This document shows, piece after piece, positions 18,575 through 58,658 of a stretch of DNA of 64,000 nucleotides (position 1 is its first letter; each line of letters starts with the position of its first letter). The stretch is from Blastocystis sp. Blastoise (lineage: Eukaryota > Protista > Bigyra: Opalinata). The notes under the pieces are model-generated. The model searched no databases, was not told where the DNA came from, and saw nothing but the letters and a program-made list of their open reading frames with translations. Both the position numbers and the translations under genes were made by a program. The stretch is taken from contig JBBPEB010000012.1 of assembly GCA_039096225.1 (NCBI GenBank), forward strand, positions 1 through 64,000, written 5' to 3'.

Positions 18575-21500
18575 ATGAGAATATTATATCTACTTTTATT
18601 CATCTATACTACATGTTTAGCAGTTAATTCTGGAAAAACACTAGGTATGTTTTTTCAATTCTCTTAATTCCATAATATTTCACATAATTGAATAGGTAAA
18701 TCAAGAGAATTGCCTGCACAAGATTGTATGATAAAGCAAGGAGGTGATTATTATTTTGATTCTGAGTATGTTTGGATAGGAAAAGATCGTAATGAAGTTT
18801 ATCTTGTATGTAATGATACATAAATAGAATTCTAGAATCATTTATAAATTTATTTAGACTTATTGTTATCATTTTCAAGGTCAAATGTGGGAAATGTTTT
18901 ATTCGAATTCCAATAATGACTTTATAACAGATAAACGAAGTTATATAGAACATATATCGGATCCTACAGGCTTTAAGAACATAGAGAATAATTCATTCAG
19001 AGATTACGACGTAATTGGTATGATTTTTATAATTTATTTATTTCTATAAATATGAAATTTATGATTATTATCATCATATTTATCTATAAAAATAAATATA
19101 AATTAAAAATATATTTCTATAGGTTCCCTTCCTATTTCGTTATTGCCAGGAACATCGTTAAAGTTGTTAATATTGAATATAAATGGTTGGTCTGATGATG
19201 AATATTTCATAATGACTTTTCAAAAGTATTCTACATTTAATGAATTCATAACAAATCAATGGCCTTATGATTCTTGTCAATCACTTCCTGGAGGTGAATA
19301 TATTGAAATACAAACAAAATCAGTCACTTATAAGTATATATATAATATACAATTATTATTATTATTACTATATATAGAGTATATGCATTATATGTTGATG
19401 AGAAAGGATTTGGTATTCGTGATTGTATTATTCATTATACAGATAATTTTATTACAAAACAACCTTCAAATTATCCAAAGTATATTATATATTATATTTA
19501 TTTATATATTATATATATATAGATATATATATTCAAATTTATATTCAAAAGAAGATAGAGTAGAAACAGTATGTGATAAAGTGAATGATTATGCTGATAA
19601 TAATATTCGAATTTTTGTTGCTACTTCTCGTATATTTATATATAATTAATGAATATAATTCTATATAGCTATAATATATACAATGAGTACCTATTATGAT
19701 TATACTGCTGCAGGAGATGGATGTTGTTTCGTAGAGGATATTACTGATGATTTCCATAATAATGAAGTGATTTCTCGATTATGTTGTTTAGATCCCCAAG
19801 GGAATACTGACTTTCAGAAATGGGGAAGTTCTAAAGAAACTGGATTCGTTGAATCAGAACTCAATGATTATGATCTTCCTGTGTATATATATATATATAT
19901 ATAATATTTTTTTTTATTCTTTTTATAGTGCATCTATGAATTCTACATATGCTACCTTCAATACATGGTTTACAGAAAGTAATAATTCTTATTCTTTCTC
20001 TTTTCCTCTTATTGGTATTATTGGTACCAAAAACCTTCTTACACTCAACTAGTATATATATATATATTCTATAATATTCTATATCTTCTAGTCCTACTTA
20101 TTTTCCTTTAACAGATGTAAAAGGAGGATATGCATTAAGTCCAATAGAAGAATATATTGGTAAGAAATGTTGGTTTACTATGAAAACAAATCTATTCTTC
20201 TTGTATATTATTATTTTATATTTATATAATATTATTATATATATAGATATGAGAATAGAACAGATCAATTTATAGATTTTGAAACGAATAATGGATTATG
20301 GGTTTTTATTAATAAACATTTATTCTTAGATTATGGAGGGTATATATATTATATATATATTATTATTATTATTTATATAGTTATAATACTCCAGTTGGTT
20401 CTCATATTAATATAACGAATTATGCAGATAAATTAGGTCTTATTCCTGGAATCACCTATTCTATATCTATATTCTTTGCTTCTAGAACATGTGGAACTCA
20501 ATCAAGTATACATAATAATTAAAATAATATTATTCTATAGATTCTATATCTCGTTTTATAACTCAAACGAATTTGACATTTCTCTGTGATGCTCCTCTTC
20601 TCTCTAAAGTAGTTTCTATGATTATTGATAAAGAAGATACTACAACTATACCAAATATGAATAATACTATTAATCTCTCTGGAAATAGTTATAGTAGTAC
20701 TTTAAATAGTGAAGGAGAAAATCTTTATTATTGTACAAGAGATTTCCAAAATATTCATATTCAACAACAAGTATATACATATTTTATTAATATATATATA
20801 TTTAGACTGTATCTCTTAATAAAACATCAATATTTGGATATCATATTTATATGTATGAAATACTTCAATTTAAATCAAATATCTATTTAGGTATATATAT
20901 ACTATATATTATATTATATATATATAGAATCCATATCTCCATTTTGTATTCTTCTTCATCCTTATATACAATACTCTTCTTCTATTCCTGTAATAAACCC
21001 TGATATTCCTTATAATAATATACTTCAATCTCGATGTTTCTCTCAAACTAATTCTTATATATTCTTCTTTAATGAAAATAGTATATAAATATATAATAAT
21101 ATTAATAATAATAAATATATAGTTCTTCAAGTCTATTTACCTGGTGATACTCCTCCTACAATGAAATCTCCTTCTATAATCACTTCAGTATCCTATTCCT
21201 TCTATAATAATGGACAATTAACTCTACAGTTGATCTCTAGATATAATCAACTTCATCTCTATCTCTCTAATAAACATACTCTTAATATCAATCTTGTATC
21301 ATTCTATATATTATTATTATTATTATTATATTTATAGGATTCTGTCTCTCATTTATCATCAGGATATTATTTAGAAATTATTTCACCAGAAAATGTATAT
21401 ATTAATAAGAATAATAATATAATTATATTGAATAGGGTATCCAATTGATATCTCCTACAGTATCAACGATTCCTTTGACTTCTACTACTATTACTCTTTC

Positions 21501-24500
21501 TGAATATCCTCTCTTCTTCACGAGTACTGCAGGATCTATATATCCACTTCAATTATTCCTTAATAGTCGATGTGGACAAATACCTATAGATATCGATCTC
21601 GAACAACGAATTAAAGTCACTTTTATTAGTGATCGAAAGGGTATATTTATTATTTATATTTATTTATTATTCTATATATATATATAGTTCCATCTCTTCC
21701 TACATATACCTTCTCCTATCTTTCTTCTTCTTCTCTTTATTTATATTTAAAAGCTATCTATGTAGCTATATATGATATTTATATAACAGTAGATGGTATT
21801 CCTATTCATTATTCTCCATTTTTATCTGCATGGACAGTAACTCATGGTTCTCTTCTTCCTTCAAATACTATTTTTATACCACCAAATAAAACTACTACTG
21901 TTGGTATTATTCGTATATATTTATTTTATTTATATAATAATAATAATAATATATATATAGATGATTTTGAAATATATTTTCGTGATGAATATAATAATAC
22001 AGTTCCTACAACATTATTTACAGGAACAATTCTATTAAATACAGATCAATCTTATTTCTTTACTTCAAAAGAAGGTATTTTATATATTTATTATTATTAT
22101 ATATATATAGATCCATTACATGAAAAATTAATATATCAATTTGTTTCTTATACTTCAGAATCTGTTTATTTTAGATGGATGTATATTTATATAATTATAA
22201 ATAAATTTATAATAATATTTCTATAGTGTGAATGGTTTATCTGTGATTAATACTCCATTCCAATTATCAGTATATAGTGATGTTCCTTCTTATCTCTACT
22301 CTTCTATCTCTACTATCTATTCAATTATTCCTTTATATAGAAGTGTTGATGTATATATATAATAATAATAATAATAAAAATAATATATATAGTTTACATT
22401 AATAGTAAGAGATCGTTATTATAATTTAGTGAATCAGAATAATTTTATAATAAAATTATATGTAACATCTTCAGAAGGATTTGATATTCCTTTATTTCCA
22501 GGTGAATCCGATCAATTCTTTAGTTATAGAATCACTATGGATTCTACTTCACAATATACATTATCCATTCGTTTCTTTCGTGAGATTTCTAATGGTCATT
22601 TATATGTACGTCTTCTCAATCAAGAAGAAGAAGATATTGATAAGATTAATTCTTATATATATTGTACTATTCAAAGTAGAATTAGTCCTAATGATTGCTC
22701 GAAAACTGAAATCTATATATCCTTTTATTTTATTTTATATTATATTCTCTCAATAATAATATTATATATATTTCTTAATTCTACTTTTTACAGTCCTATT
22801 AGTTTTGCAGGTACATTAACGTATATGTATATATATACAAGAGATATATATGATGATGGATATTGTTTAGATAATCGAAGAGATAAATATAAAGTGTATA
22901 TTAAAGGTGATGGAGAAGTATATTTATATATTTATATTATAATAAATTATTATTATATATAGTATACTCAGAAATCCTTTTATTCATTTTCAACATCTCC
23001 TTCTCTTGATATATATACACAAGAATATCAATATACTTCTATTTGTCCTCTTTATACATTTATTCAATTACCTTCAAAAGTTAGAAATATAACTGTGAAA
23101 ATAGATTGTTTATCTGAAGATAATATTTGGTCCTCTTTAGAATGGAATATCACTACTATACCTTCTACTGAAATGTATATTATTTATTTTATTATTCTCT
23201 TATATATATATATATAGTACATCTACAATAAAAGTAACTCATGATTCTCTTTATACTGCTGGTGATATTATTCCTATAAACATCAAATTCTTTGATATGT
23301 AATTAATTATTATTCATTTATATATTATTTATAGATATAATAATTCAGTAATTAATTTACAAAGTGTGTATAAAATATGTGATTATAGTTATGTAGAAGG
23401 TATATTTAAATATATATAATTTGAATATAATTTTATATAGATCGAAATACTTATTATGATGTTATGAATCCAGATTCAATAAGTCTTCTTAGTACATGTT
23501 CTATACCTGCTAAAGTATCAGGATTCCATAAGATTTCATTGATTACATTAGTTTCTGGAAATATCTATGAATCTTATCTAAGTAAATATATTTATATATA
23601 TATATATAATATCTATAATAGCTGTTGTTCCTGGTACTCTTTATATTGCTCATACTGATATTCATGGGACTGGAATTGAATTTGCTTCTTATTGTGATTC
23701 TACTAATATTTCTATTTGTGGAGATATCTATATGAATTTAAAAGTATTTAATTATTATTATATATATATATATATATTTATAATAGGATGAATATTTTAA
23801 TTCATTGAATGCTACATATTATATTGAAGAAGGTGGATATTCAAAAGAAGATCCTTCTTTTTCTATATATAATCATGAAGGAGAATATATTGATATAGAT
23901 ATTCGACGAGCTGATACTTTAGAAGATACTCCTTTCACTGTAGATAAACATATACTCAATAATACTATTCATATTCATTATATTGTTGAAATGTCTTCTA
24001 TTATTGGTCTTACTGAATCAGAATATCCTTATTTATATATACGTCTATTCTTTCAAAATAAACAAGATAATCTATTCTCTAAAGATATTCCTGTTACTCT
24101 ATCTTCTCTTCCTTATTCTCTATTCATGTATATATTTTATTATTTTTTAATTATTTTATATATATTTATAGATTAACATCTCCTCTTAAATTTCATGTAT
24201 CATCGATATTAAATGTCAATTTAGAAACAGATCCATTCTTTTCATTTCAAATATTTGATGAAAATCAACATATTATTACGGGTCAACAATCTAATCTTAA
24301 ATGGTATTCTATTATTATTATATAAATATAAATATAAATATAGGATAAATATAGATGAAGATTATTATGATGGAATCATGTATATAGTTGAAACTACATC
24401 ACCTGGTACTTATAAATATCCTTTTATATATATATATATTAATAATAATAATTAAATACTATTATTTTCTTTAATCTATATACAACTATACCTCATCTTC

Positions 24501-25179
24501 CTACTGCTCGTAATTATACGTTTATATTATTATATAATAATATGCCTATATTGGATACATCAGTGACAATTACTACATTCACATGTTTAAAGTATTCTTT
24601 ATCATCAACCTATTCAGGAACATTCAGTATGGGATTTGTACCTGAAATAAGAAGAGAATTAGATGTTATTGTTAAAGATATTCATAATAATGAAATGTAT
24701 GTTGTTTTTAAATAATATTTATTATTATATAGTCCTATTCCTATAAATCAACAATTCAATTTAACTTCTTCTCCTCCTCTTCTCTATTCTTATACTCTCA
24801 ATAATAATCATATTCATGTATATATATAATAATAATATATAATTAATATATTATATATATAGTTTCTAATAGATTCTCCTCTTCATCTTTTTTCTTATCG
24901 AGATCTATATACTATTACTATTTCTACATCATTTGAAGATCAACCCTATATTGAAATACTTACTACTACTACTTATGCTTATCCTAATATGAGTATATAT
25001 ATAATATATAATATATAATATTATTATATAGATCTTCTTGGATCTCCTTCTTATTTACTTTGTCCTGATGAATTAACTACAGGAATAGAATTCAATTGTA
25101 CATTTCATCCACGAGATATTTATGGTAATGATATTAATCCTACTTATATTCAACCATTCTTAAAATCAACATGTATATA

Positions 25180-25213
<34 letters not shown>

Positions 25214-28200
25214 AAGTGATTGATTCTAAGGGTAATAATCTTAATGTATGTGATTTACCTTATTGCACAGGGAATAAACCAGCTATCTTTATTTTTGATC
25301 ATAATACTATTTATACAAAGTATATATTATATATATTATATTATTATTATATTATATAGAATGTATTATATTGATGCTGATACATACACAATAACATTTT
25401 CTCTTGAGCAAGTTCATTATGAACAACAATTTCAATTGATTATTTCTCCATCAATTATGGACCCTCAACAATCATTTATTCATTTCCCTTCTAATAATAA
25501 TCCTATTCCTGTTCCTAATTATGAAGATTATGGAAAAAATGGTATTTATTATATATATTATTTTATTATATATATAGAATTATTAGATGATGAAGGAATT
25601 AATAAAAGTATATATATATATATTTATTATAGTTATTATTTATATATATAGCTTATATAGCTGGTAATCAAATTTTCATTCATGTTCATCTCTTTGATAT
25701 ATCTTTTATATTATATATATATTATATTATTATCTAAATAAATATTTTCTTAATAATCACTCCTTTAATAATACAATAGAAGAAAATATATCAAAAGAAT
25801 TATATATAGAAATATATAAGAATGAAACTCGTATAGAAACTGATAGGTATATATATTTATTATTATTATAATTATTATATAGTTATGCAATATTAATTTA
25901 TGGAAATGTATATGTATTTTCGTTATATTTATATACAATTGGAAACTATGATATATATGTAAAACGATCAGGAGTAGCTTTATTAGTATTTATATATATA
26001 TTATATTCTATATATATATGAATAGAATTCTCCAATACAAGCTATTATAAAACCATCAGAAGCTACTTCCTATATATATTCCTGTTCTCCCTTAGAGAAT
26101 GAAGATAAGTTACCTGATGAATTATGTAGTATACATGGATTAAGAGAAAATGTATATATTTATATATTACATTATATTATATATTAATAGACAAAAGGAT
26201 CATTCTTATTATCTACTGTAGATATATATGAGAATCCTGTATATACCTATTTTGACACAAATCTATTCTCTATGGCTATTACATCTTCTGTATATTTATA
26301 TATATAATATATATATTATTATTATTCTATATAGTCGAATACAATGTTTATTCCACCTCATTTAACTGTTCAATTATATGATAAAGAACTTGGTATATAT
26401 ATAATAATATAATAAAATATAATATTTATATATAGGTCAATATTTAATAATTTATAATGATTTAACTTCTACTCATCCTGGAAATTATATCCTATTTATA
26501 TAAATATAAATATATTTAAAAAATGAAAATTATTTTCTTTAATGAATATACTAACTGAATATACACTTCAATTATATTATAATTCAACTTCTCCTTTTCC
26601 ATTATTAAAGATTCAACTCTATCCAGCACAAATCAGATATCAATCTACAAGTATTCTTATTATATAAATAAATGAATATAAATAAATATAGTCCTTAAGA
26701 ATGATGATTGTGAACGTGTGAATACAACTTGTTCTATATATGTATATCTTTATGATATATATGAGCGTCCAATAGAATTTGATGCCTATTCTATTTCTAT
26801 TGAAATGGATGTATCACTGGATATAGAGGGTGATGGAAATCTTATTCTTCATACTGAACTATTCCCTTGTATATTTATAAAGGATTCCTATACTTGTGAA
26901 TATAAATTAATCTATTCTGGTGATTATATATATTATCCTATTATTAATAATCATCCATATCTTCAATATCATTATCTATATCCTTTATATTATATATAAT
27001 ATTATTTATAATAATAATAATAATATATTTCTATATATTTCTTAATAAACTTACTTCTCTTTCTCCCTTAGAACCTGAATATACAAATACATATATATCA
27101 TTTATTTCAGAGAGTACTTCTCTATATACAGATGTGACTATGATTATTAAGATTCGTGATGCATTAGGGAATTTATTAGATATTAATACATCTAATAAAA
27201 CTCTATTTGCTATTATTACTCTTGATTCAAGTGGAAAACAAAGATCTGTATGATTTCATATATATTTAATAATAATTATTTCATAAAATTTCTATATAGC
27301 TTCGATTGACTATTCCTTTCAAATCTCAGACTCCTTATATACATAGTTTAACTATATTATCTCCTTTATATGGTTATGGATCTATAGATTTTTATTTAAC
27401 AGATATTACTTGGGATGATCTTACAAATACAGAAATCTATACAAAGATATTATTAGGTACTCAACCAAATCTTGTTTTCCTTCCTTCTTTATGTAAACAG
27501 CATTCTTCTCTTAGTCCTTATATGTGTTATAATAATATGAATGGTGATTACATAAAGAATCCTATAGAATTCTTTGATAATGGACAAACTATTCATTGTG
27601 TTTCTGATTGGAATGATTGTCATAATAGTCTTACTTGTCCTCTAGGAATGGAAGCTTGTATGAATCGTGAATCTGAAGATATTCATATAGGTTGTCAACA
27701 AGATATTCATAATTGTACTTGTCATGGATATATATGTGAAAATGGAGCTTGTGTAGATAATTATATGAAGTATATAGATTGATTTTATTTTTTTAACTAA
27801 TATAATATAATATAATATATTTTTAGATGTCCTTCTTTTCCTATACATGATACAAATAAAGTAATATGTGTTGATGGAACAATAGCTATAAATAAGCAAA
27901 TGTGTCCTCAACAAGTTCATTGTCCACCTTCTACAATTACTTGTGGAGATCTAGTTACTTGTGCAGTATCTATAGAAGAATGTAATCAATATAAAAACTC
28001 TATTCAATGTCCTTCTTATGCTCCTATTTTATGTTGGGATAAAGTATTTTATATGATTTTATTATTATTATTAATAATATATATATAAATAGAAAAGTTG
28101 TGTTATTGATCCAATTGAATGTCCTTCTCTTCGTTTTTGTCCTAAACCACTTATTTTATGTCCTGATGGAATGTGTACACATAAGTATATATATATTATA

Positions 28201-31200
28201 TTATAATAATATAATAAATAATAAATAATAATTATAGTATATCTGAATGTATATATACAACATGTCCATTAACGTATCCTTATCGATGTCCTCAAGGATA
28301 TTGTGTTAAGAATGCTACTTTATGTCCTTCTTCAATTACATGTCCAAGATATTATCATTTATCTCCTTCAAATCAATGTATTTCGGATTCTATATTTATT
28401 TTTGGTGAAACTTATAATTATCAATATGATAATAAATTCTTATATTTAAATTTATCTGAAAGTGCACCGAATACAAGATCAAAAAATATGAATTTATATT
28501 CATCTTCTTCTATTCTTAATAATAATATTCAAACTATTTCTTCTATTAAAACTATTAATAATAATAATAATGAAGAAACTACTTTATTTCCTTATCCTCT
28601 CTATCATAAAGATGCTTATAATAATATTATTTATGAAAAATCTTTAAATGAATCTACAATCATTAATATCTATACAAATTGTCCAAAAAACTTTTATAAA
28701 TGTAATGATAATACTTGTGTTGTTTCTATGCTTGAATGTCCAACACATGTTTCATATCCTTTATATATTTATAATATTTATTTATATTTATTATATTTAT
28801 TTATATATTTATATATTTTCTTTAATAACTTTACATGTCATTCTCCTCTTGTATTATGTCCTGATAATACATGTAAACCTTCATCTTTTTATTGTTCTCA
28901 AACACCTCTTTGTCGATCTCCTTATATAAATTGTCCTAATGGAGGATGTGCTTTATTCTATCAACAATGTAGACCTAGTATCTTATGTACTTTTGAAAAA
29001 CCTATTCTTTGTGATAATGGTACTTGTGTTGAAAATAGTCAAGATTGTTATTCACAAATTCATTTTATTGAAAGAAATCAACAAGGAAGTATATATTATA
29101 TATATTATAATAATAATAATAATAAACAATAAACTATAATAAAATAAATCTTTAGAAACTACTACAAATATAACTATTCCTTCTTCTTCAATATTATTAA
29201 CATCTCATTGTCCTTCTGCTTATCCATATTATTGTTCTTCTAGTAAAACATGTGTACGAAATAGTTTATTATGTTCAAGTCCTGTTATTTGTCCTACTAC
29301 GAGTCCTATATTATGTGATACTGGTTATTGTGTATCTTCTTATTCATTATGTACTGATGAATCTAATTATCATTGTCCATTAGGATTCTATATGTGTGAT
29401 TATCAAAAAATATGTGTAGAACATTCTTATTTATGTCCTACTATATCTGTATGTAGAGATAATGAAATGAGATGTGAAGATGGAGGTTGCTATATGATTG
29501 AAGATAGTACTTATGGTGTTACCAATATATTCCCTTATATCTATAATTCTTTACAAGAATATAATGAAGAATATTTAGATATAACAGAATATCATGCTAA
29601 ATCAGATTTAAATATAAAACATACAATAGAACAATGTGTTAGTAAATATTTAGAAATGTATATCGATGTATGTAATATATATAATAATAAAGAAGATATA
29701 AATAATTGTATAAATAAAATAAAAGATCGATATCAACATTTATGTTCACGTAATTATCAATTTTATCCTTGTAGAAGATATAATATACATTATAGTGATG
29801 ATAGTTATTATATATATAGTATATCTCCCTATTTTATACCTACAGGAGATCCTATTGCTTCTATAGAAGGATCTTTAACTTCTATAAATAAATATTATTG
29901 GGATCCATTATCTACAGATACATCCTTTCAATCGAATATCTTATCGAATTCTATTCCTCCTCCTCTTTGTCCTAAAGGTAGTAAACGATGTATAGAGGGT
30001 AGTTGTATATCTCAAAGTGAACAATGTCCTTCTTATCGTATATGTCCAAGAAATAAACCTATTTTATGTAGTGATGGATTATGTCATTATCATCAGAATC
30101 AATGTCTTAATACTATTCATTGTCCTATTAATTATAAATTATGTAATGATGGTAGTTGTGTATTTATAACAAAGAAATGTCCATTATTATATTGTCCAAC
30201 TACAAATCCTATATTATGTTGGGATCAATCATGTCATGTTTCTGAAGATGATTGTCCACCTATACCTCCTTATGTACCTTCAAATTGTCTTAATGGAAAA
30301 TGTATTACTACTGGAGCAAGACAAGTTACTAAATTTACTAGTTTCTGTAGTATTCATGGAGAATATGTTAAAGATCGAAGTGATTGTATTAATGGATATG
30401 AAGGTTATTATAGTATGTTTTTTTTTATTATTTGTATTTTTTTTTTATTTTATTATTTTATAATTTTTTTTTATAATAAAATATATATTTTTATAATATA
30501 TAATATCTTTTTTATAGATAAATATTCAATGGAAAGTGATCATTATGTGACTGGTTTTTGTAGTTATGATAAATATTTATGTTCTGATGGTACATGTGTT
30601 CGTGATTCTTCTTTATGTTCTGAACCTTTATGTCCTATGTTTAAACCTTATAAATGTATTTCAGGATTATGTGTATCTTCAAAAGAAGAATGTACATCGA
30701 ATGATAATTGTAATAATGATCAATTTAGTGGATGGTGTCATAATACATTAATATGTTATTCAAAAGATAGTTCAAAGAATAATATAGATATTTATCATTC
30801 TTCTTGTGATTGGACTTGTAATACTAATGGATATATACGTTGTTTAGATGGTACATGTCGTCAATCTATAGAAGATTGTCCTCTTTCGAATGGTTGCTCT
30901 TCTTCTAAACCTAAATCATGTTATAATGGTGAATGTATAAAAGAAGATGAAGAATGTAGTCGTATGTTTGTTTATTTTATTTTTTTATTTTTTTTTTTTA
31001 TTTTATTTTATTATTTTATTTATAATAATAATATTTATATTTATAATAATAATATTTATATTTATAATAATAAACAACTATTATCTAGCTTTATGTGTTG
31101 CTCCATATAAACAATGTGAGAATGGTTTGTGTATGATATCTACTTTTTATTGTCCTTATTCTTCTTATTCATTTATTCCTGAAGATACATCTCCTTCTCC

Positions 31201-34200
31201 TTCTTTATTTGAAACTTCATTATTGAATACAGATATAAATAATAATAGTTATCTTAATAAAATAATGAATAATATAAAATCTATAATAAATACTCTATAT
31301 AATACAATAATAGATTCTTTTATGAAATATATGGATAAATCTTTCTTTACAGAAAATAATCTTCAGAAATCATCTCCTTTATTAAATGAATATGAATATA
31401 CATTAATAAACAAAAATAATAATACTAATAAACTATCCTTATTTTCTTCAGAACTCTTTGAATCTCCTTTAGTTTATTTTGTAGATCGTCAATATTTATA
31501 TTCTTATTTTTCTAGTCTTCCTTCATTATGTAGTGAAGATAAACCAATTCGATGTGCTATAGGTATATGTGTGAAATCGTATACAGATTGTCCTTTGATT
31601 ATGCCTTGTAATACAAGTAATTATAATACAAATTATATTCGTTGTTCTGATGGTAGTTGTCGTGCTTCTTCTTCTTTATGTACTGATCGAACTATATGTA
31701 CATCTCCTTATAATTATATGTGTAAAACAGGATTATATAATGGATTATGTGTTGAAAAAGAAGAAGATTGTCTTAGTGATAATGGTAAGTTTATTATTAT
31801 TACATATATATTAATTAATTACTAAAAATAAATAATAATAATAATAATATATATAGGTTGTCCATTATCATCTCCCTATAAATGTCCAACAGGTCGTTGT
31901 GTGAAATATTCTTATAATTGTACAACTGAATATACATATCATTCTTGTCCTCATGAAAGACCTTATAAATGTATTCGAGGAGAATGTGTAAGGAATGCTA
32001 ATGAATGTACATTTATTAATGGTTGTTCTCCTCTTCATCCTATATTATGTTCTAATGGTACTTGTGTTTCTACAAGAAATGAATGTTCTTCTATTCTAAA
32101 TTCTAATACATATTCTTGTCCTATAAATCAATCTTATATATGTCCAAATGGTCAATGTGTTTCTCATCCTTCACAATGTTTATTATTAAATAGATGTTCT
32201 ATATATCATTCTCAAGCATGTGCTTCTGGAGATTGTATTCCTTTACATGGTCAACGATATTCACCTATTTTATTATCTTTAAATATTATAAATGAAGATC
32301 AATCTGATAATTATTATAATTCTATAGAAAATTATACATTAATACAAGGAAAAGAAACAGATCAAGAAATTAGTTTTATATATAGAAGTTGTCCAAAAAG
32401 ACCTATTTGTCCAAAAGATATTCCTTTTCTATGTGATGATATGAGTTGTGTAGCTCATTATAGTTTATGTAAACCATGTATAAATTGTAATGTATGTAGG
32501 TGATGTTTATGTTATTAATTTTTATTTTATTTATTTTATTTTATATTTTATTTTATGTTATTTTTATTTAAAATATATACTAATAATAATATCTATATAT
32601 AGCAAGATCCAGAAAAACTTCCTTTTTGTCCTTCACATTTACCTGTAGAATGTCCTGATGGTATATATAATAATAATTATATAATAATAATAATATTTTA
32701 TAGGTACATGTGTATTAAATGAAGGTGATTGTCCATTACTATCAAATTGTCCTGAGAATCTTCCTTATCATTGTTATAATGATTTATGTGTATCTTCTCC
32801 TCTTTATTGTGAAACATTAAATATAACATTATTTTCATCTCTTCCTTCTCCTCTTTCTTTTTCTTCGATTACATTATGTCCTGATGGGTCTTTTCGTGAT
32901 ATTTCTCTTTGTCCTCCTATTCCTCCTTGTCCTACTACATCTCCTAAAAGATGTCCTAATGGTATTTGTGTAGATATCAATATCGATTGTAATTCTATAT
33001 TTATATCACCATCAGGACAACAAGTAGGAAGATCTATTTATTCACCTTATCATTATTATGATTATTCTATTTATTCTAAAGAAAAATCAAATCAAATTAA
33101 TATTCATTATGATTCTACTACATTATCTATTTTTATTCCTATTCTATATTCAAATAATAATACATATAGTTGCTTTATATCTACATATCAATTATGTTCA
33201 GATGGTATTTGTAGATTAACATGTCCTATTACTTATGGATGTATGAACAATCAATTAAGATGTCCTGATTCTACATGTATATCTTTCTCTAAAGAAACAG
33301 AATCTACATTATCATGTAAAGGATTGTATAATTGTCCAAATAATATGTATAGGTATGGTTGTTATTTTTATTTTATATATATTATATTTTTAATTTTATT
33401 TATATAATTATTTTATTATAATAATAACAATAATAATATTTTTTTATAGATGTTTTGATGGTAGTTGTCATTATTCTATATCAGAATGTTTATATTTGAA
33501 TCCAAGAGATATACTTCCTTATGATTATCGTATTACTTTATTAGGTCAAGAATCAAAACAAATTATTCTATATACTCAAACGAATGATTTTTATGGTTAT
33601 ATACATACACCTCATGGTATATATATATATTAATTAATTAATGAATAAAATATATTATTTTTATATAGCTCAATTACATTCTACAAATTTACCAATATTT
33701 TTATCTATAACAACATTATCATCTTCACAATTAAATCAATATACATATAAAGCTAATAATTATACACGTCTTCAAGAATTACGTTTTATTTCAGGAAAAC
33801 CTATAGCTATATATGAACCTCCTCGATATGATTCTTCTTTATTATCTTTACATTTACCTGTAATTCAACATGGATTAATATTAAATTTAACTTTTATAGA
33901 TATTTATAATAAACGTGTAGAATCCTTAATGAATGCAATAGAGATCGATTTAATGTTCCCTCGTAAAGTATGGTTATTACCTCGTGTACTTCAAAATAAT
34001 ACTTATTATCGTCATCCATTAGATATTACAGAAGATGAACATTGTATTGCTAAATTAAATGAAAAACGAAATGAATTTGAATGTTTAGATGAAATTCAAT
34101 ATCGATTTGAAAAAAGTATGATTCTATGTAATATCAAAGAAAGTGGTGTTTATGGTATTATTATAAGACCCAAATTATCAAAAGGATCTTATCCTTATAT

Positions 34201-37200
34201 ATATACAAATCAAAATTCCCAAATTAATACAATCACAATGATTATTTGCTTTGTTTATCTTCCATGTTTTATTATTTTATTGTAAGTTGTTTTTTTTATT
34301 ATTATATTATTATTTTTTTATTTATTATTATATTTTAATTATTTATAAAAATAATATTTATCTTTCTATAGATATTTATTATTTATGTTCTTACGATATA
34401 AATTTCGATGGGATTTTATGAATAAGACCTTTGTGAAATTAGAGACAACAAAAGAAAGTGATCGAATTGAAGATCAATGGCATAGTGAAACACAAGAATG
34501 GATCAATAGTGGTATTGATTTAAGAGATCGAGGTAAATATCGATTAACAGAAAATCAATATGCTTTTGAAACTCAACAGAAAATGAAACAAGATGAAATA
34601 TGGAAAGAAAAATCTATTATAGTAAATAAAAATGAACAAGAAATTAAACGAAGAATTAAACGTATAAAAGCTTTACAAGTATATATTTATTATTATATTA
34701 ATATAAATTAATTTTAAAAATTCTTTTTATAGTTATATTATACTTATTTACAACAATTACAATTACAACCTCATTCTTTAACTCGTTCATTTAGTTCTCC
34801 TGGATATATATCCTTACAATTTCCTTCAAGTGATTCTTCTTCTATTCATAATGAACGTTCTTCTTCTATTAATAGTAATACAGATATGAATATACCTGAA
34901 GGAATAGATATAAATAATGTTGATTCTCATAGTATTCCTTCATCAACAATAGGATCTGCATCTCCTATTTTAAAATCAACAGATAATAATGATAAAGAAC
35001 GTTTATTACCTTTATTACAAGCAACTATGAACATGAATTTAGAACATTCATTATTTAGTCATAGTATTCATACAATATCATTTAATGAATATTATAATGC
35101 AAATATAACTCGATCTTATTCAATGAATAATTTCCATCGTACGAGTAGTACTTGTAGTACTTATGATCAAGATTCTATTCATAGACCTTCCTTATATTTA
35201 TCCTATTCACAATATCATCATAAAAATAGTAATAGTTTTGATCATAAGATGAATTCTAGAGATCAAGATAGAGATCGATATCATTTATATAGTAATGATA
35301 CTGAAGATTTATCTATGGGATTAGATATTGATGGAAGTGGAGATAGTTCTCATCTTTATAATAGTCGTAATAATAGTCATAATAATTCATTTTCTAATAA
35401 TAATAATAAAAGGATGATAATCACAGCAGATTCTGTTGTAGGAAATCCTAATTTCTTACGTGGAGGAACTCTATTGAATATGAATCAAAGAAAGAATAAT
35501 AATTATAATAATGATGATATTCAAGAAAATAATTCAAAGAATAATTTTAATTTAAATTCTAGAAGAGAATTTTTATCAAAAACTATAGATCCTTCTACAA
35601 TAAGAAATATGAGATCTTCTATGAATATACTATCTTCACCAAAACAGAATCATCCTTCTAGAGCTTCTATGTCTATATTAAATATATCTCATGAACCTAT
35701 AGTAGATTCTAAACATCAATCCATGAATTCAAGTGTTTCTATATCAAATTCAAAATCGAATTCGAATTCTAATTCTTCATCAAAACATAGTAGTTTAGAT
35801 TCTTATAAATCAAAGAAAAATAATATTATTATTAATAATAATGAAAATAATATTGATATTATTCATAAAGAAAATAATGAGAATAATGAATCAAATACAC
35901 CTATAGAATCAACAGAAGAGAAACCTAAACGTAAAGTAAAAAAGATTATTAAGAAACGTATAGTAAAGAAGATTGTTAAGAAAAACAGTAATTCTCCTGT
36001 TTCTGAAACTATTGAAGATAGAAAAGATGATAATAATAATGATTTAAATGAAGATAATAAGAATAAGAAGAAAGTAAAGAAAATTATTATTCGTAAAGTT
36101 AAAAAAGGATCTAAAAGTCCAATAGAAGAAGATTCAAAGATTATAAATGATAGTAATAATAATAATAATCATTCTTCTTCTAAATCTCCTCATGATCCAA
36201 TCAATTCATCAACTATAAATAAGAATTGTGAAGAAAATAATGAATTACTAGATACTATAATATTAGATCGTAAATCATTATTAACAAGAAGATCCCTTAA
36301 TATAGATGCTCTAAATGCATCAAAAATGAATCAAATGAATAATAATAATAATAATACAAATCGTGTGAAATCTATGGTTATTCTTCCTCAATCTTCTATT
36401 AATAATAAATCTATAAATCAAAATGATAATAATAATCTAACTCCTTCTCAAATCATATTAAATCATAATAATAATAGTTCTTCATCTTCTACATCTCCTC
36501 ATCCTATAACTATTTCAACTATATCTCCTACTCGATCAGGTATTCATTCTTATACTAATGGTCATTCACCTATTCTTAATAATTCAAATATACCTATACC
36601 TATAGTATCTACTATAGATCAATCTAAACTATTGAATGATTCATCAATCAATATATCAAATCAAATTCCTATTTCTTCTAATAATACATTATCTCATATA
36701 CCTATATATACAAATAATAATTATCGATTAGATTTCAGTCAATCTCCTCTTCCTTTATGGAATAATAATAGATATAGTTCAAATGGTTCTCCTTCTCTTG
36801 TCTCTCCTTCTCATCGAAATTCTTCTTTTGGCTATTATTCTGGACATCGAACTTCTTCTATTTCTTCTTCAGGATATTCATCTCAAAACCCATTATCCTC
36901 TCCTAATCCATTAATATATCCTATTTCTTTGTCTCATTCTCATACTAATAATGAAAATATTATTGAAAATAATAAGAGTAATAATGAAAATATAATAAAT
37001 AATGATGAGAAAATAAACAAAAAAACAAAAAGAATGAATCATAAAGAGAAATCAAAGAAACAAAAAAATAAGAATACTTTATTAACAAGTTCTAATAGAA
37101 ATAATAGTATATCTCCCATAAATCGTATTAGTCGAACTGTTATTCCTTCGGATCTTGATATTCAACAGGAACTTGATAACAAAGCTTATAGTCCTCCTCT

Positions 37201-37309
37201 ATTTATTCCTCATTTACAAAATGATATAAAAACATATAAAGAAGGTATAGAGAAAGATGGTTCTATTTCTTCTATTTCAACTATCGACGAAAATGAAAAT
37301 AAAGAGTAA
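18575..37309 (+). CDS. Giant type-I membrane/surface protein: signal peptide, PA14/fibro-slime domain, filamin/Ig-like repeats, Cys-rich repeats, single TM, low-complexity cytoplasmic tail; about 62 introns
   Basis: Manual splicing gives a continuous frame from ATG 18575 (MRILYLLLFIYTTCLA) to TAA 37307-37309. Fibro-slime-like motifs at ~19930-20505 (FNTWF, LWVFINKHLFLDYGG, LGLIPGITYSISIFFASR). Recurrent RD.Y.N motifs at ~21400-27400. CPxxxPxLCxDGxCV repeats at ~27480-33490. Hydrophobic ITMIICFVYLPCFIILLYLLFMFL followed by RYKFR at ~34230-34400. Confidence 0.85.
22717..22791 (+). other. U12-type AT-AC intron (75 nt, phase 0)
   Basis: ATATCCTTTT...TTTCTTAAT-12nt ending AC. Splicing gives KTEIY|SPISFAG. 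Confidence 0.85.
24416..24483 (+). other. U12-type AT-AC intron (68 nt, phase 2)
   Basis: ATATCCTTTT...TTCTTTAAT-CTATATAC. Splicing gives PGTYK|TIPHLPTARNY and removes a stop. Confidence 0.9.
25699..25760 (+). other. U12-type AT-AC intron (62 nt, phase 0)
   Basis: ATATCTTTTA...TTTCTTAAT-AATCAC. Splicing gives HVHLFD|SFNNTI, restoring the D.F.N repeat motif. Confidence 0.85.
26487..26551 (+). other. U12-type AT-AC intron (65 nt, phase 1)
   Basis: ATATCCTATT...TTCTTTAAT-GAATATAC. Splicing gives HPGNL|TEYTLQLYY. Confidence 0.85.
26978..27054 (+). other. U12-type AT-AC intron (77 nt, phase 2)
   Basis: ATATCCTTTA...TTTCTTAAT-AAACTTAC. Splicing gives QYHYL|SLSPLEPEY...KIRDALGN. Confidence 0.9.
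28754..28834 (+). other. U12-type AT-AC intron (81 nt, phase 2)
   Basis: ATATCCTTTA...TTCTTTAAT-AACTTTAC. Splicing gives ECPTHVS|CHSPLVLC, restoring the Cys-repeat spacing. Confidence 0.9.
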
Positions 37310-43167: not shown

Positions 43168-46100
43168 TTACATAGATTTCAATACTTGAGTATACTCATT
43201 AATAAGAATATCATCAAACATATCTTCCATTTTCTTTAGGGTATCAAAATTACCTCTATTATTATTAGGGTCTACTAAAAAGTCTTCATCAAATATATAA
43301 TTATTACCTTCAACTCTTCTACCATCAAAAATATTATTATCAATTACTTCTCTTAATTTATTAGCACTTAATAATATATCTTTTCTTTCAATAGGCATAA
43401 AATGTACTTTAACATTACATTTAACAATAGTTTCACAGATCTTATGATATTGTTTATTCAAATCAATTCCTCTAAAGGGATAAACTAATTTACATTCTTT
43501 TACTAAATTATGCATAGGATCTCCACCACATACCAATAATATATGAGTACAGCCAGGGAATTTATCAATTTCTTTTAATGCTTCCAATAAACCACCATTC
43601 ACATCTTTGCAATTTGAACAACAACCTTCACAGAAACCACCACCTGTTTTTGTTTTACTATTTAAAAAGTCATCAGAGAAATCATTTGGTTTACTCATTC
43701 CACTTGAAACAATACGTACGTTATCATCATAATTACTATATTGAACAACTTGATAACGAATAGAAGCATTATTCTTTCCTAAAATTTCATTACGTCTTTT
43801 ATCTAATTTCTTTAATACATTGCCAAAGAATTGTTTTGTACTATCATAATACTGATGTTGATTACCAGATGTGCATATAACAATAGATACAACTAAATTT
43901 GTAGGTGATTTTATATCTCTCCTTTCACATTCTTCTGTCTTTATATCTTGATCTGTAAAAGAAGACATATCTACTTTATTATAATAATCAGGTATTTGTT
44001 CATTACTAAGATCAGCTGCATGAGATTCATTAGTTTCATTCAAATAATCATCAAAATTAAGTGACCAAATAACTGCATTACTTATCCAACGAGCTGTACC
44101 ATCACTTGACCAATCACTATATAACTTACTAGCTGCTGTATCTATTACTATTCTACCATAATTCTGATATGCATCTTTTATCATTACAGCAGCATGACCA
44201 TTTTGTTCTCTTGCAAATGTTTTAAAACCACAATTAACTAATTCATCTTCATCAATATTTGCTAATGTTACACCTTCAAATATTTTATTTAAACCATAAT
44301 TTATAGGTAATCTACATTCTTTATTAAACAAATCTTCACCAATAGGAACAAATTGACCATAACCTGGATCTTTATCATCATCTACTTCATCTATCTTCTT
44401 CTCATAAATCCAACCACGTCCATCGATCTTCTCTTCAGTATCACATAATTCACTTATATGATAAGGACCATCTTCATAATTAAAGAATTTACAAGCTTCA
44501 AAATCTAATGGAGAATTCTCTAACATAAACATAATACCACCACCATGAGCATGGAATATATGTAAACATTTTATAAAACTATTCAAATAATTAAAATCAC
44601 CTTGATGCTCTGGATCTCCTAAAACACCATCACCAGGACTACATGTAATAACTACACTTCTATATTTACCTGATCTTAATCGATCCATAGCATCAAAATA
44701 ATCATATACTATATCTACTCTAAATCCTTTAACTTTTAATTTAGCTACAGGTCCTTTCTTTAAATTATCAACAGTAACATCAGGATCAACTTGATTTCCT
44801 TGTTCATCTATATTATTAGGTCTAGCAGTATATAAAACAACAAATAATACATTAAATTGATCAAAAGCACCATCTCTACCTAAATCATCACTTGAATTAT
44901 CACCATTTTCATCATCATCTACTCCATCACCATTATTATTCTTCTTATTAGAATTCATATTTAAAAACTTAGCACGTCGTTGATATTCACCAAATTCATC
45001 AATAACCTTCTTTATATCTGCTGGATGGAAAACATCATTGAATTTATTTTTTAATAAATTTTCATAATATATAGTATCACACATATAATTACATATAGTA
45101 TTAGGATTAGTAGTAGGTGTATGCATATTCTCTAAAGCAGTAGGAAGTTTATGTATATCACTACACCATATAAAAGAAGGGAAAATATTCTCATAATCTA
45201 CTATACTATATCCAATACCTATTCCTATAAAAGAAGTTTCACTACTTATAATTACATTCTTAATTTCTTTACGAGCTATTTCACAAGAAATACCATCAGT
45301 AAAGACAAATTCCATACTTGAATAAGGACGACTATTACATACAGAAGTAGCTTGTTTTATTACTTGATCAATACATGTAGAAGGAGTAGGAGAAGAGAAA
45401 TGTTGAAATAAAGAAGAAAGAATTGTATATGTCCAAATTTCATAAGATTGTAAACCTGTTCCAATACAATAACATTTATCTTTTGCTATCCATATATCTA
45501 CAGCTGATACAGATAATTCACTTAAACATCGTATAAATAATAATATAGTATGAATTGAATGACGAATATTTAATATATTAAAAGAAGAACATTTACAATC
45601 TATTATTATACTAATAGAATAAGCACGAATCTTACCTCCTGACTTCTTCTTAAATAATTTACCATTACCTGTTTTAGTTATCAAGAAATTAATATAATTT
45701 CTTAAATGAATTGATGTACCTGTAACAGAAGCAATCCAACAAGTAGCTTTATTTGGAGGAATTATAGAATTATTCATAGAATCATATATTAATTCCTTAC
45801 TAATAATACTACTCATTTGATTCAATACTAATGTATTTCCTCCATTAGGAACATGTTCTAAATCTGTTTGAGCAACAGAAGGAAGAATAATAGTTTCTCC
45901 TGTTTTTTGGAATAAACTAACTACATAAGGTATACCATTATGCTTATCAAGTTCTGATAAACGAGATATTGTATTATCCTTTCCATCTTCTTGAGGAATA
46001 GATAATATAGATAATATATCTATTACTTTAGAATTCACACTATTTTGACTTGGATATACTACTTCTAATTTATCTATATTTGATTCAAGTAATTCAGATG

Positions 46101-49100
46101 AATAAAACATATTTAACAATGAATCAGAAAGAGGTTGAGAACATAAAGAATCTATCTTTGAAACATTCATCATATTCTCTTTAAAATTATTCTCTAATAA
46201 ACGATTCATTTCATTCAAAAGTACTTCAGGAAGTCTTTCATCTTGTATTAAGCCATCAGATTGTATATGGAATAAAAATAAATGCTGAAGATTTGTTGTA
46301 AAGAAACTAGTAATTTCTGGTCGTTCACTTAATAATTGTTCAGAATAACCATCAGATAATATAAAGAATGATTGAGTTTTAAGATCTTTGGATGGCTTTT
46401 CAAAAGCAAATAAATCTAATGGTGTTGAAGGTATCTTTTCTACTGTTTCTAAATCATAAATAATAGAAATTTTTTCATATAAATTATCTTTTGTTGGTAT
46501 TAATTTAAATGCTTGTGAACGACCTCCTGTACAATATAGAGAAGTTGGTATACCTAAACAATCACAAATAAGTAATAATAAACAACCTATAGTACTTCTT
46601 AATCTTGATTTATTCACTTTATGACTTACATTCACATCAAATATCAAATTCACTCGAGGAATATATTTATTCTCTCTCTTTTCACTCTTACGTATACTAT
46701 TCACATAATATGATAATATACCTTTATAATTAACCAATATAAAATCTATTAGATTTTGATTTCTATTAATAGCTTCTATATTAATTTGTTTCAAACGATC
46801 TTCATTTGATGATGTTATTTTAACTAAATCTAATATATTCTTTCGAGACATTACATCTTTAAATAAATTAGATAAAGACATAGATCTAAACTCTTGTAAA
46901 ATCTTTTTAATATCATTTCTTTTAATTTCAAATTGTTTACGATCTTCTTCTTGTTTTTGTTGTTCTTCAGGATTTAAATCAGCATCTATAGAAATCACAT
47001 GTGTAGCAGCTGACGCTATATTCTTAGCTTGATGTAAGATATCTTCAATATCATTTGGATTAATATTACCACCACTAATCACAGGATTTGAAGACTTTGG
47101 TTGTGAATCTGATTTAGAATCTGTTACCTTCTTTTCATATTTAAATTCTTTTGTATATCTATTTAAAATATTCTCTATCGAAGGAAAAGATTCATTCATT
47201 TGATAAATAGAATCTTTACAATTAAACCATACTAATTTATATGTATTATTAAATACACATAAACTCTTTTCAGCATAATAATAAATAGTTGAGAAATAAT
47301 TATCTTTATGACTTACTATATACTTTAATAAAGTATATATCTTATTTATATCATCACCATGAGTAGAGTCAAATAAACAATAAGGAGATTGTTGAATAGC
47401 ATTTACATATTGAACAATATCATTATTACATAAATTATCTAATAATGAACTACAAGTAGATTCTAATTGAATACTTTGGGTTATTCTATTATCTTCTGCT
47501 TTTGGTTCTTCAAATATATTTATAATACCATTAGAATCAATGTAAAACTCATTATATCGACAATTTATATTCATATTATAACGAATTAGATATTTAGTAT
47601 TAAATACATATCTATTATCTTTATTTCCTGAACGATAATAATATGGTTTACCATTCATAATAAACGATATACTTGAACCAGCTACATTAAAGAACTTTGA
47701 TCCATCTTTATAACATTCACAAGAACAATTCTCTTTTGTATATAAATATGAAATTTGACGTTCTACTGGAGCAATACAATTAATAACCGTATCTTTATGT
47801 TGTTTGCTTCCATTTTTTTGATCTATATATTGAACACGTAATACTAATGTGAACTCAAGTTTATCTTTTTTATCTATATCATATTCATCAGAAAATTGTA
47901 TTTTTATTCCAGAAGAAACATTTTCAATAAGAATAGAACTATCATTACATTTACATATATATTCATATTTCATAGGATTTAGTATAGGTATTAATAATGT
48001 TGGTTTATTATATGAATAAACATAAGTAGGTAAACGTAAAATATTATTATTATTCTCACTAGCTACAATTATTTGAGGAATAGATCTTAAAGATAATATA
48101 TTAATACAATTCTCAAATTTTGGACTCTTTGTATATTTTAAGTAGTTCTCAGATCCTTCATCAATATTATATCGATCTACAAATACACGAGAACTTAATA
48201 AATGCTTATTTGTAGCATTAATAGTTTCTTCTATTGTTTTAAGTTCTTTTTCTATTCCAAGCTTAGTTTTATATTTCGCATCATATTCCTTTACAATATT
48301 ATTAATACGAATACTTATGTCTCGAAGATTCTTTACATACCTATCATCATTACTTAAATTAGGTACAGTATATATTTTTAATGCATTTATTTCATCTGCA
48401 TCTGTATAATATAAATCTTCTTTATTATAATGCTTACCTTCATCAGAATTCAAATAAGAATAATCATTAGCTTGAGGTTCAGGGTCCATCGAATAGCAAG
48501 GTATTTCTACAGATTTACAATCAGATTTAAAGTAAAAAGGCAATGTACAACAAGAAGAAGCAAAAGAAATAGCATAACGATCATTAATATCATTAGTTGT
48601 ATCATATTTATATAGCAGAATAGTATTTTCTTTTCGTTTACTAAAATCAGAATTAGATTGATCATGATAAAATAATGTTTTTTCAATAACAGAAAATTGT
48701 TCGATTCTAAATGATCTAGAAATATTATATAATATCTTTTTTTCTTTCATTATATTACATAAAGCATCTAAGAGATAATTACATAATAATAATTGTTCAT
48801 CTTCGAAAGAATCATGTCTAAATAAGTCAGGAAGACTAACATAACGATAATGAATATTTACACATTTCTCAATTTTATTTCTATTAATAATAACATCATA
48901 AGTAGAAAAAGGAAGAGGAATAAATGAAGAATACATAGTCTTCTTTGATAATGGTTTTGATTCAATTTTAAGCGAATGATATTTAAAAGTAATTGGTGCA
49001 GGTTCTCCTTGATTATTAACTAATTGGAACTCAATAGGAATATCTCTACAAGTAGAAGGATATGTAATAAAAGCTACTTTAATAAATTGATTAGAAATAG

Positions 49101-58100: not shown

Positions 58101-58301
58101 ACATTTGTTATATTTAATATATTTATTATGTTTATTATGTTTATTATGTTTATTATATTTATATTTATTATATTTATATACTATCTACAATGATTTCTAT
58201 GACTGTAGAAAGGCAATCCTCTTGAAATAATGAAATATCACTAAACATTTTAGGAGCACGAGGAAGATCAACTATATAATAATAATAATAATAATAACAA
58301 T

Positions 58302-58366
<65 letters not shown>

Positions 58367-58564: not shown

Positions 58565-58658
58565 CTAATAACAAGTATATCTACAGTAAAAACAAGGAAA
58601 ATAAAAAGATAAATAAATCCTTTAGAGAAAAATAATTTAAATTAATATATATATGTAC

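What the first reader, a model, noticed from the sequence alone, without database searches (positions are those of the whole stretch)
22717..28834. Six U12-type AT-AC introns clustered in 6 kb of one lineage-specific surface-protein gene
Seen: six introns (22717-22791, 24416-24483, 25699-25760, 26487-26551, 26978-27054, 28754-28834) start ATATCC/ATATCT, carry TTCTT(T)AAT 6-12 nt before a terminal AC, and each restores the frame. That is about 6 of 62 introns in the gene, and about 6 of 31 within this stretch. Known: minor introns are normally well under 1% of introns, usually one per gene, and sit in ancient housekeeping genes; large expansions are exceptional (e.g. Physarum). Inference: this lineage may have gained minor introns extensively in a young, repeat-rich gene, making a giant surface protein dependent on the minor spliceosome six times over, possibly as an expression throttle.
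Basis: partly seen in the sequence, partly recalled or inferred. Interest (0 to 1): 0.92.

Follow-up and report, generated by a model that had tools for sequence, protein, structure and literature searches.

The report
Six minor-spliceosome introns in one gene
A giant surface-protein gene of a tortoise-gut Blastocystis carries six rare AT-AC (minor-spliceosome) introns, but five are shared with a distant pig-gut relative and all six recur in sister genes, so the cluster is old and inherited, not a recent burst.

Summary
All six segments have U12-type AT-AC signatures: ATATCCTTT-like 5' ends, a TTTCTT(T)AAT branch box 6-12 nt before a terminal AC, and restored reading frames.

- **Paralogs:** six paralogs at 95-97% identity keep all six introns. 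Splice motifs are invariant, while interiors carry indels that are not multiples of three.
- **Relative:** a collinear ortholog from pig-gut metagenomes has AT-AC introns at the same position and phase for five of the six. It has uninterrupted coding sequence exactly across the sixth.
- **snRNAs:** the genome encodes U11, U12 and U6atac, plus a weak U4atac candidate.
- **Organism:** NCBI's Blastocystis sp. 'Blastoise', matching the Russian-tortoise strain Rus-B of Lind et al. 2025 in size and GC. Minor introns are already published for the genus, at about 1% of introns and mostly one per gene.

Six of about 61 introns is a real excess. It is old, and it is multiplied by a gene family that lies near contig ends. 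The "young gene, recent gain" reading is not supported, and the "expression throttle" idea is untested. Deposited gene models break at or bypass these introns. The scan already reported the same cluster on paralogous copies (s1-723207, s1-729675).

The parts
18575..37305 (+). Giant gene of about 61 introns and about 5,200 codons. Predicted type I membrane protein with a beta-rich N-terminal half, a cysteine-rich CPxxC repeat half, and a long Ser/Asn-rich tail. The 3' end is uncertain.
   Evidence: Gene model. Start codon and signal peptide. No Pfam hit. Collinear ortholog L020 from exon 1 to exon 58.
18575..18644 (+). First exon. Met followed by a hydrophobic signal-peptide-like stretch (MRILYLLLFIYTTCLAVNSG), then GT-AG intron 18645-18694.
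   Evidence: read from the sequence. No predictor was run.
22717..22791 (+). U12-type AT-AC intron 1. 75 nt, phase 0, 5' end ATATCCTTT, branch box TTTCTTAAT 12 nt before AC.
   Evidence: Paralog lengths are 72-84 nt, some not multiples of 3. Same position and phase in L020:5700-5750.
24416..24483 (+). U12-type AT-AC intron 2. 68 nt, phase 2. An alternative in-frame AC lies at 24486.
   Evidence: Same position and phase in L020:7285-7334.
25699..25760 (+). U12-type AT-AC intron 3. 62 nt, phase 0, 5' end ATATCTTTT.
   Evidence: Same position and phase in L020:8464-8514. Deposited models skip the upstream 15-codon exon instead.
26487..26551 (+). U12-type AT-AC intron 4. 65 nt, phase 1, 5' end ATATCCTAT.
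   Evidence: Same position and phase in L020:9218-9279, and the 3' end AATGAATRTAC is also shared.
26978..27054 (+). U12-type AT-AC intron 5. 77 nt, phase 2. Absent from the pig-gut relative.
   Evidence: L020 has an uninterrupted ORF here. Only the 26978/27054 splice gives an ungapped protein alignment from the CEYKLIYSGDY region onward. The alternative donor 26957 and the deposited GT-AG 26920-27071 need gaps of 7 and 25 residues.
28754..28834 (+). U12-type AT-AC intron 6. 81 nt, phase 2, inside the cysteine-rich region.
   Evidence: Paralog lengths are 68-81 nt, some not multiples of 3. Same position and phase in L020:11463-11514.
34232..34393 (+). Predicted transmembrane segment, split by GT-AG intron 34282-34371 and followed by the basic stretch RYKFRW.
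   Evidence: read from exon translations. No predictor was run.
23965..23966 (+). Site where this copy precisely lacks a 37-45 nt GT-AG intron. Five near-full paralogs have it by alignment, and BLAST coordinates of three partial copies show a matching ~34-nt gap.

Best explanation
The six segments are genuine U12-type (minor-spliceosome) AT-AC introns in a giant signal-peptide/transmembrane protein gene of Blastocystis sp. 'Blastoise', a tortoise-gut strain.

Inferred mechanism, from established U12 biology:
- The 5' splice site ATATCCTTT is recognised by the AAAGGG 5' end of the genome's U11.
- The branch box TTTCTT(T)AAT pairs, with two G-U wobbles, with the conserved GUAAGGAAA of its U12.
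- Excision ends at an AC 8-14 nt after the branch adenosines.

The cluster is inherited, not new. At least five of the six were already in the gene before the tortoise lineage split from a 39%-GC lineage found in pig guts. The whole set was then copied with the gene into a family near contig ends: at least six further near-full copies and several partial ones.

How six minor introns first came to sit in one gene is not resolved. Nothing found here shows that the cluster has a regulatory role.
For: Shown:
1. Motifs, lengths and frames.
2. Six paralogs at 95-97% identity keep all six introns. Across 6-7 copies, the 54 alignment columns of the 5' splice-site 9-mers have no substitution or indel. 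Interiors have indels in 26% of columns, and lengths differ by non-multiples of 3 in every intron, including the two that are in-frame in this copy.
3. Exons evolve under purifying selection (dN/dS 0.2-0.4) with no stops.
4. The pig-gut contig L020 is collinear over exons 1-58. It has AT-AC introns with ATATCYTTT and TTCCTTGAT-like boxes at identical position and phase for introns 1, 2, 3, 4 and 6, with unrelated interiors.
5. Intron 5 is exactly absent there, which fixes its boundaries.
6. U11 scores 62.9 bits and U6atac 63.8 bits, both above Rfam cut-offs. U12 scores 46.8 bits (E 7e-7) with an intact branch-binding box.
7. The strict motif is 16-fold over its control genome-wide.
8. The organism is identified by exact contig lengths and NCBI protein names. 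Minor introns and all minor-spliceosome parts are published for Blastocystis ST1 (PMC5608401, PMC10639083).
Against: - No transcript-derived protein was found.
- Deposited gene models (KAK8797611.1 and cluster mates) do not use the AT-AC sites. They start or end inside introns 2, 4 and 6, and they bypass introns 3, 4 and 5 by exon skipping or by a 152-nt GT-AG intron. The annotation pipeline preferred RNA-supported introns (PMC12129017), so I cannot exclude that some of those junctions are real isoforms.
- U12 is below Rfam's gathering score. U4atac is only a 29.7-bit candidate.
- The U6atac candidate has an unusual 5'-splice-site box.
- The taxonomic identity of L020 is inferred, not shown.
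- The enrichment statistic uses the published ST1 rate, not a count for this genome.
Confidence: 0.8

Rival explanations
1. One reading: a recent, lineage-specific burst of minor-intron gain in a young, repeat-rich gene.
For: Larue and Roy argue from phase distribution that Blastocystis minor introns may be recently gained, and that turnover in the genus is fast (PMC10639083). Intron 5 is present here and absent in L020, so one gain is possible. No homolog of the tested exon was found outside two lineages.
Against: Five of six introns are shared in position and phase with a relative whose exons are only about 27-55% identical. Exons flanking the six introns show no significant mutual similarity. 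The introns share nothing beyond splice motifs.
Confidence: 0.06
2. The segments are not removed at AT-AC sites. Transcripts retain them or use nearby GT-AG sites or exon skipping, as in the deposited gene models.
For: Deposited models do exactly this, and the pipeline favoured RNA-supported introns. Introns 1 and 6 are stop-free and in frame in this copy.
Against: The deposited splices delete residues that are coding and alignable in L020; at intron 5 that means a 25-residue gap against none for AT-AC. They also end models by reading into introns. Paralogs carry frame-breaking indels inside every one of the six segments while keeping exons clean. Splice motifs are invariant in paralogs and conserved across lineages. 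BRAKER-type predictors do not model AT-AC introns (my knowledge).
Confidence: 0.05
3. The cluster arose by ancient internal duplication of an Ig-like repeat unit that carried one U12 intron.
For: The N-terminal half shows about 12 loose repeats with x-F-x-I-x-x-D-x-x-G-N and G-x-Y motifs. Introns 2 and 4 both follow a P-G-x-Y motif. Intron 3 follows an LFD motif at nearly the place where a GT-AG intron follows FFD in another repeat.
Against: Phases differ (2 against 1; 0 against 2), so the positions are not identical. Exon-by-exon BLASTP finds no significant similarity between the flanking exons (best E above 1e-4). Intron 6 lies in a different, cysteine-rich domain type.
Confidence: 0.1
4. 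The cluster is kept by selection, because slow or limiting minor splicing gates expression of this surface-protein family.
For: Across the family copies seen, no AT-AC intron was lost in 43 intron-copies, while eight GT-AG introns were lost precisely. The family holds about a third of the strong-consensus AT-AC introns I could count in this genome.
Against: With about 3% loss per GT-AG intron-copy, zero of 43 is expected by chance about a quarter of the time. No expression data exist here. Rate-limiting minor splicing is shown only in animals (my knowledge).
Confidence: 0.1

Closest known systems
U12-type AT-AC introns of Blastocystis ST1 (Gentekaki et al. 2017, PMC5608401; Larue and Roy 2023, PMC10639083)
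   Same: Same genus and same intron class. ST1 minor introns are 77% AT-AC, very short, and often phase 0. The full minor spliceosome is present.
   Different: ST1 has 346 U12 introns in 319 genes, so almost always one per gene; here there are six in one gene. The introns here are longer (62-81 nt against a median of 39) and use a C-to-T drifted branch box in a 23%-GC genome. The paper describing this strain does not mention minor introns.
Human genes with two or three U12 introns, mostly voltage-gated ion channels (Turunen et al. 2013, PMC3584512). Non-random co-occurrence of U12 introns in the same genes is also reported (Moyer et al. 2020, PMC7367187).
   Same: Several minor introns cluster in one gene beyond chance and are conserved over long times.
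   Different: The count here is twice the human maximum. The gene is a genus-restricted surface protein rather than an ancient channel or information-processing gene. The cluster is also multiplied by a gene family.
Physarum polycephalum minor-intron expansion (cited as the exceptional case in PMC10639083)
   Same: Many minor introns per gene are possible.
   Different: Physarum shows a genome-wide expansion. Here the genome-wide count of strong-consensus AT-AC introns is modest, about 120 by two strict patterns, and the excess is confined to one gene family.

Membership tests
U12-type (minor-spliceosome) intron, AT-AC subtype | Extended 5' splice site /ATATCCTT at the intron start | tested here: met
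   ATATCCTTT in four, ATATCTTTT in one, ATATCCTAT in one. Invariant in the paralog copies. ATATCYTTT in the ortholog.
U12-type (minor-spliceosome) intron, AT-AC subtype | Branch box resembling TTCCTTAAC, close to the 3' splice site (about 10-15 nt), with no long polypyrimidine tract in between | tested here: met
   TTTCTTAAT or TTTCTTTAAT ends 6-12 nt before AC. The differences from consensus are C-to-T changes that keep G-U pairing with U12's GUAAGGAAA. The ortholog has TTCCTTGAT-, TTCCTTCAT- and TTCTTAAT-type boxes. Distances are at the short end of the known range.
U12-type (minor-spliceosome) intron, AT-AC subtype | Terminal AC, with excision restoring the reading frame | tested here: met
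   Ungapped junction alignments to the ortholog.
U12-type (minor-spliceosome) intron, AT-AC subtype | The genome encodes the minor snRNAs U11, U12, U4atac and U6atac | tested here: inconclusive
   U11 and U6atac are above Rfam cut-offs. U12 scores 46.8 bits against a cut-off of 53, with the functional box intact. U4atac is only a 29.7-bit, E 0.045 candidate at C8:151033-151167. Minor-spliceosome proteins were not searched here; they are published for ST1 (PMC5608401).
U12-type (minor-spliceosome) intron, AT-AC subtype | Removal from RNA at the AT-AC boundaries, dependent on the minor spliceosome | not testable with these tools
No transcript-derived proteins were found.
Filamin / Ig-like repeat surface protein | A recognisable Ig-like or filamin domain by profile or fold | tested here: not met
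   No Pfam hit on 20 exons and ORFs. The Atlas look-alikes score 0.76-0.77, a lead only. The AlphaFold model has pLDDT 38 and is all-beta but unusable.

The most novel reading that the evidence does not exclude
The six-intron cluster is under selection. A family of at least 15 loci near contig ends holds about a third of the genome's best-consensus AT-AC introns. Its surface proteins would then be gated together by the activity of the minor spliceosome, giving a single trans-acting bottleneck for a surface-protein repertoire. This would explain why precise intron loss in the family has so far removed only GT-AG introns.
Probability: 0.08. Interest if true: 0.75.

Novelty: new member of a known kind. 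Interest (0 to 1): 0.45.

Why it matters
- **Number per gene.** Six U12-type introns in one gene is, from the literature I could read, the highest count outside Physarum. It sits in a genus flagged as the odd case for minor-intron evolution (AT-AC rich, phase 0 rich, fast turnover).
- **A natural comparison set.** This gene and its paralogs offer five old minor introns, one that differs between lineages, and recent precise losses of neighbouring major introns. That makes it a compact place to test whether minor introns resist loss.
- **Annotation.** The deposited annotation of this genome cuts a roughly 5,000-residue surface protein into fragments of 450-1,000 residues at these introns. Proteome-based analyses of this strain therefore miscount and truncate this family, and probably other AT-AC genes too.

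Tried and rejected
- **Reads.** Only local scripts that aligned the window to already fetched paralog loci touched them.
- **Joined model.** The spliced protein was never sent to a search tool. Searches were exon by exon, by reference. Short junction peptides were built only inside local scripts.
- **Homolog search through intron 6.** The search for homologous proteins with the stop-free stretch through intron 6 returned nothing.
- **Genome sampling.** There is therefore no genome-wide U12 fraction.
- **Relaxed motif.** A relaxed motif search was noise-dominated, 637 matches against 550 for the control.
- **Internal repeats.** Exon all-against-all BLASTP found nothing significant.
- **Pfam.** No hit on 20 pieces.
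- **Structure.** The single-sequence AlphaFold model had pLDDT 38, so no fold search was run.
- **Other subtypes.** The search for ST1, ST4 or ST7 orthologs found only the pig-gut lineage and one weak hit.
- **False positives.** A repeat of about 18 copies starting ATATCCTTTCTAAAATAA matches the U12 pattern, but it reads as an open frame on the other strand, so I take it as coding and a false positive.
- **Telomere.** No telomere repeat at the window start.
Full report
**Observation.** Their 5' ends are ATATCCTTT (four), ATATCTTTT (one) and ATATCCTAT (one). Each has TTTCTTAAT or TTTCTTTAAT ending 6-12 nt before a terminal AC. They are 62-81 nt long with 6-12% GC.

A dynamic-programming gene model allowed GT-AG, GC-AG and ATATC...AC introns. 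It chose all six as AT-AC among 53 GT-AG introns in one plus-strand gene. Two more GT-AG introns bring the total to about 61: the first intron at 18645-18694, and 25542-25577, which is in frame and is confirmed by the deposited models. Neighbouring GT-AG introns are mostly 35-57 nt with GTATAT...TATAG ends. Phases of the six are 0, 2, 0, 1, 2, 2.

Introns 1 and 6 are multiples of three and stop-free in this copy, so frame alone does not prove them. Two boundaries are ambiguous from sequence alone: 24483 or 24486, and 26957 or 26978.

**More than chance.** The strict pattern ATATCCTTT, gap, TTTCTTWAW, gap, AC has 114 matches in the 33.3-Mb genome against 7 for the reversed control. Four matches in 6.1 kb have P about 7e-15. 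My crude models for the rest of the window gave 67 GT-AG and no AT-AC introns.

**Organism.** Proteins 99% identical to the tested exon 45 are NCBI entries of Blastocystis sp. 'Blastoise'. Their contig lengths (752,296; 1,362,363; 2,387,977; 1,317,030) equal those of contigs C23, C13, C8 and C26 of this assembly. Size, scaffold number and GC match the Russian-tortoise isolate Rus-B of Lind et al. 2025 (PMC12129017). That paper never mentions U12 or AT-AC introns.

**Machinery.**
- The genome has U11 (62.9 bits) and U6atac (63.8 bits), both above Rfam cut-offs.
- It has a U12 at 46.8 bits (E 7e-7, below the 53-bit cut-off) whose GUAAGGAAA branch-binding box is intact.
- The observed branch boxes differ from TTCCTTAAC only by C-to-T changes, which keep G-U pairs with that box.
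- The U11 5' end reads AUAAAGGGC, complementary to CCUUU of the 5' splice site.
- U4atac is only a weak candidate (29.7 bits).
- The U6atac candidate reads GCCGA where the consensus has the AAGGA box. I could not follow this up.

**Transcripts.** The spliced protein was never sent to a search tool. Searches were exon by exon, by reference.

**Paralogs.**
- The 4.7-kb core has six near-full copies at 95-97% identity on C26, C31, C8, C14, C13 and C23, plus about nine partial copies. The six near-full copies lie 35-115 kb from contig ends.
- All six AT-AC introns are present in the near-full copies.
- Across 6-7 copies, the 54 columns of the 5' splice-site 9-mers carry no change. Interiors have indels in 26% of columns.
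- In every one of the six introns, some copy differs in length by a non-multiple of three, including introns 1 and 6.
- Flanking exons show dN/dS of 0.2-0.4 and no stops.
- The segments are therefore non-coding, but their ends are constrained.

**Ortholog.** An exon-45 search of 1.8 billion representatives found one other lineage. It sits on contigs from gut metagenomes, one of them labelled with a pig-gut sample. Contig L020 (39% GC) is collinear from exon 1 to exon 58, with exon identities mostly in the range 27-55%.
- It has AT-AC introns with ATATCYTTT starts and TTCCTTGAT-, TTCCTTCAT- and TTCTTAAT-type boxes at the same codon position and phase for introns 1, 2, 3, 4 and 6. Alignments across each junction are ungapped, and the interiors are unrelated.
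- At intron 5, L020 has an uninterrupted ORF. Only the 26978/27054 splice aligns without a gap from the CEYKLIYSGDY region onward. The 26957 donor needs a 7-residue gap, and the deposited GT-AG 26920-27071 needs gaps totalling 25 residues.
- Five introns therefore predate the split of these lineages. Intron 5 was gained here or lost there.
- This repeats, on this copy, what an earlier follow-up found on a paralog (s1-723207).

**Deposited annotation.** KAK8797611.1 starts at an ATG inside intron 4, bypasses intron 5 with the 152-nt GT-AG, and ends by reading into intron 6. Its cluster mates start after intron 2, skip the exon before intron 3, and end in intron 4 or skip its flanking exons. The pipeline combined BRAKER3 with RNA-supported transcripts. 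I therefore cannot exclude that some of these junctions exist as isoforms. They do remove residues that are conserved in L020.

**How unusual.**
- Blastocystis ST1 has 346 U12 introns in 319 genes, about 0.9% of its introns (PMC5608401).
- Humans have about 50 genes with two and a few with three (PMC3584512).
- At the ST1 rate, six or more in 61 introns has P about 2e-5. This is an inference, because I could not count introns in this genome.
- Two strict patterns find about 120 strong-consensus AT-AC introns genome-wide, a lower bound. About 40 of them lie in this family.

**Origin.** Exon-by-exon comparison gives no significant internal similarity around the six introns. Where motifs suggest equivalent repeat positions, the phases differ. 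Internal duplication is therefore unsupported. The introns share nothing beyond splice motifs, so an introner-like spread is also unsupported. The original cause of the cluster remains open.

**The protein.** It has a signal-peptide-like start at 18575, a hydrophobic segment followed by RYKFRW at the exon 57/58 junction, a beta-rich half with loose D-x-x-G-N and G-x-Y repeats, and a CPxxC-rich half. There is no Pfam hit. The Atlas search gives only a weak filamin/Ig lead, and the structure model is unusable. 'Surface protein' is therefore a reasonable inference, not a demonstrated fact.

**Verdict.** This is a real and unusually dense cluster of minor introns in a genus already known to have them. 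It is old rather than recent. It is multiplied by a gene family and is invisible to the deposited annotation. I class it as a new member of a known kind, of moderate interest.

Noticed in passing
window 23965|23966; paralog sites equivalent to window 23582-23621, 23744-23786, 24304-24343, 24697-24732, 24818-24862, 25173-25216 and 25320-25359: Precise presence/absence of GT-AG introns among 95-97% identical paralogs. This copy lacks one intron that the other copies examined have. Five other copies each lack one or two (twice an adjacent pair) with exact exon-exon joins. This looks like ongoing cDNA-mediated intron loss. No AT-AC intron is missing in 43 intron-copies, which is not statistically significant.
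   Followed up: partly
G000 contigs C26, C31, C8, C14, C13, C23 and C30 (this window): The seven near-full copies, including this one, lie about 18-115 kb from contig ends, which suggests a family near chromosome ends. There is no telomere repeat at the start of this window.
   Followed up: partly
L002:1501-1617 (-) = G000:C21:544821-544937: The only U6atac hit has GCCGA where the Rfam consensus (and, from memory, human U6atac) has the AAGGA box. From memory, that box pairs with the CC of the 5' splice site. The splice sites of this genome nevertheless stay ATATCC.
   Followed up: no
NCBI proteins KAK8797611.1, KAK8807832.1, KAK8813398.1, KAK8805924.1, KAK8789786.1 (P0001, P0005-P0008): Deposited gene models of the family are fragments of 448-996 residues. 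They begin, end or detour at the AT-AC introns.
   Followed up: yes
window 57908-57960 (-): One more possible AT-AC intron: ATATCTTTA start, TTTCTTATT box, AC end, 53 nt, 13% GC. It lies inside a second very large gene on the minus strand (about 43171-61234, 13 modelled introns).
   Followed up: no
G000, about 18 loci, e.g. C2:405333-405396 and C14:84322-84385: A dispersed repeat starting ATATCCTTTCTAAAATAA matches the U12 motif pattern. It reads as an open frame on the opposite strand, so it is a likely false positive for motif-based minor-intron counts.
   Followed up: partly
window gene and L020: In both lineages the AT-AC introns are clearly longer than most neighbouring GT-AG introns: 62-81 against mostly 35-57 nt here, and 50-62 against about 26-41 nt in L020. 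This fits a minimum length for minor splicing.
   Followed up: partly
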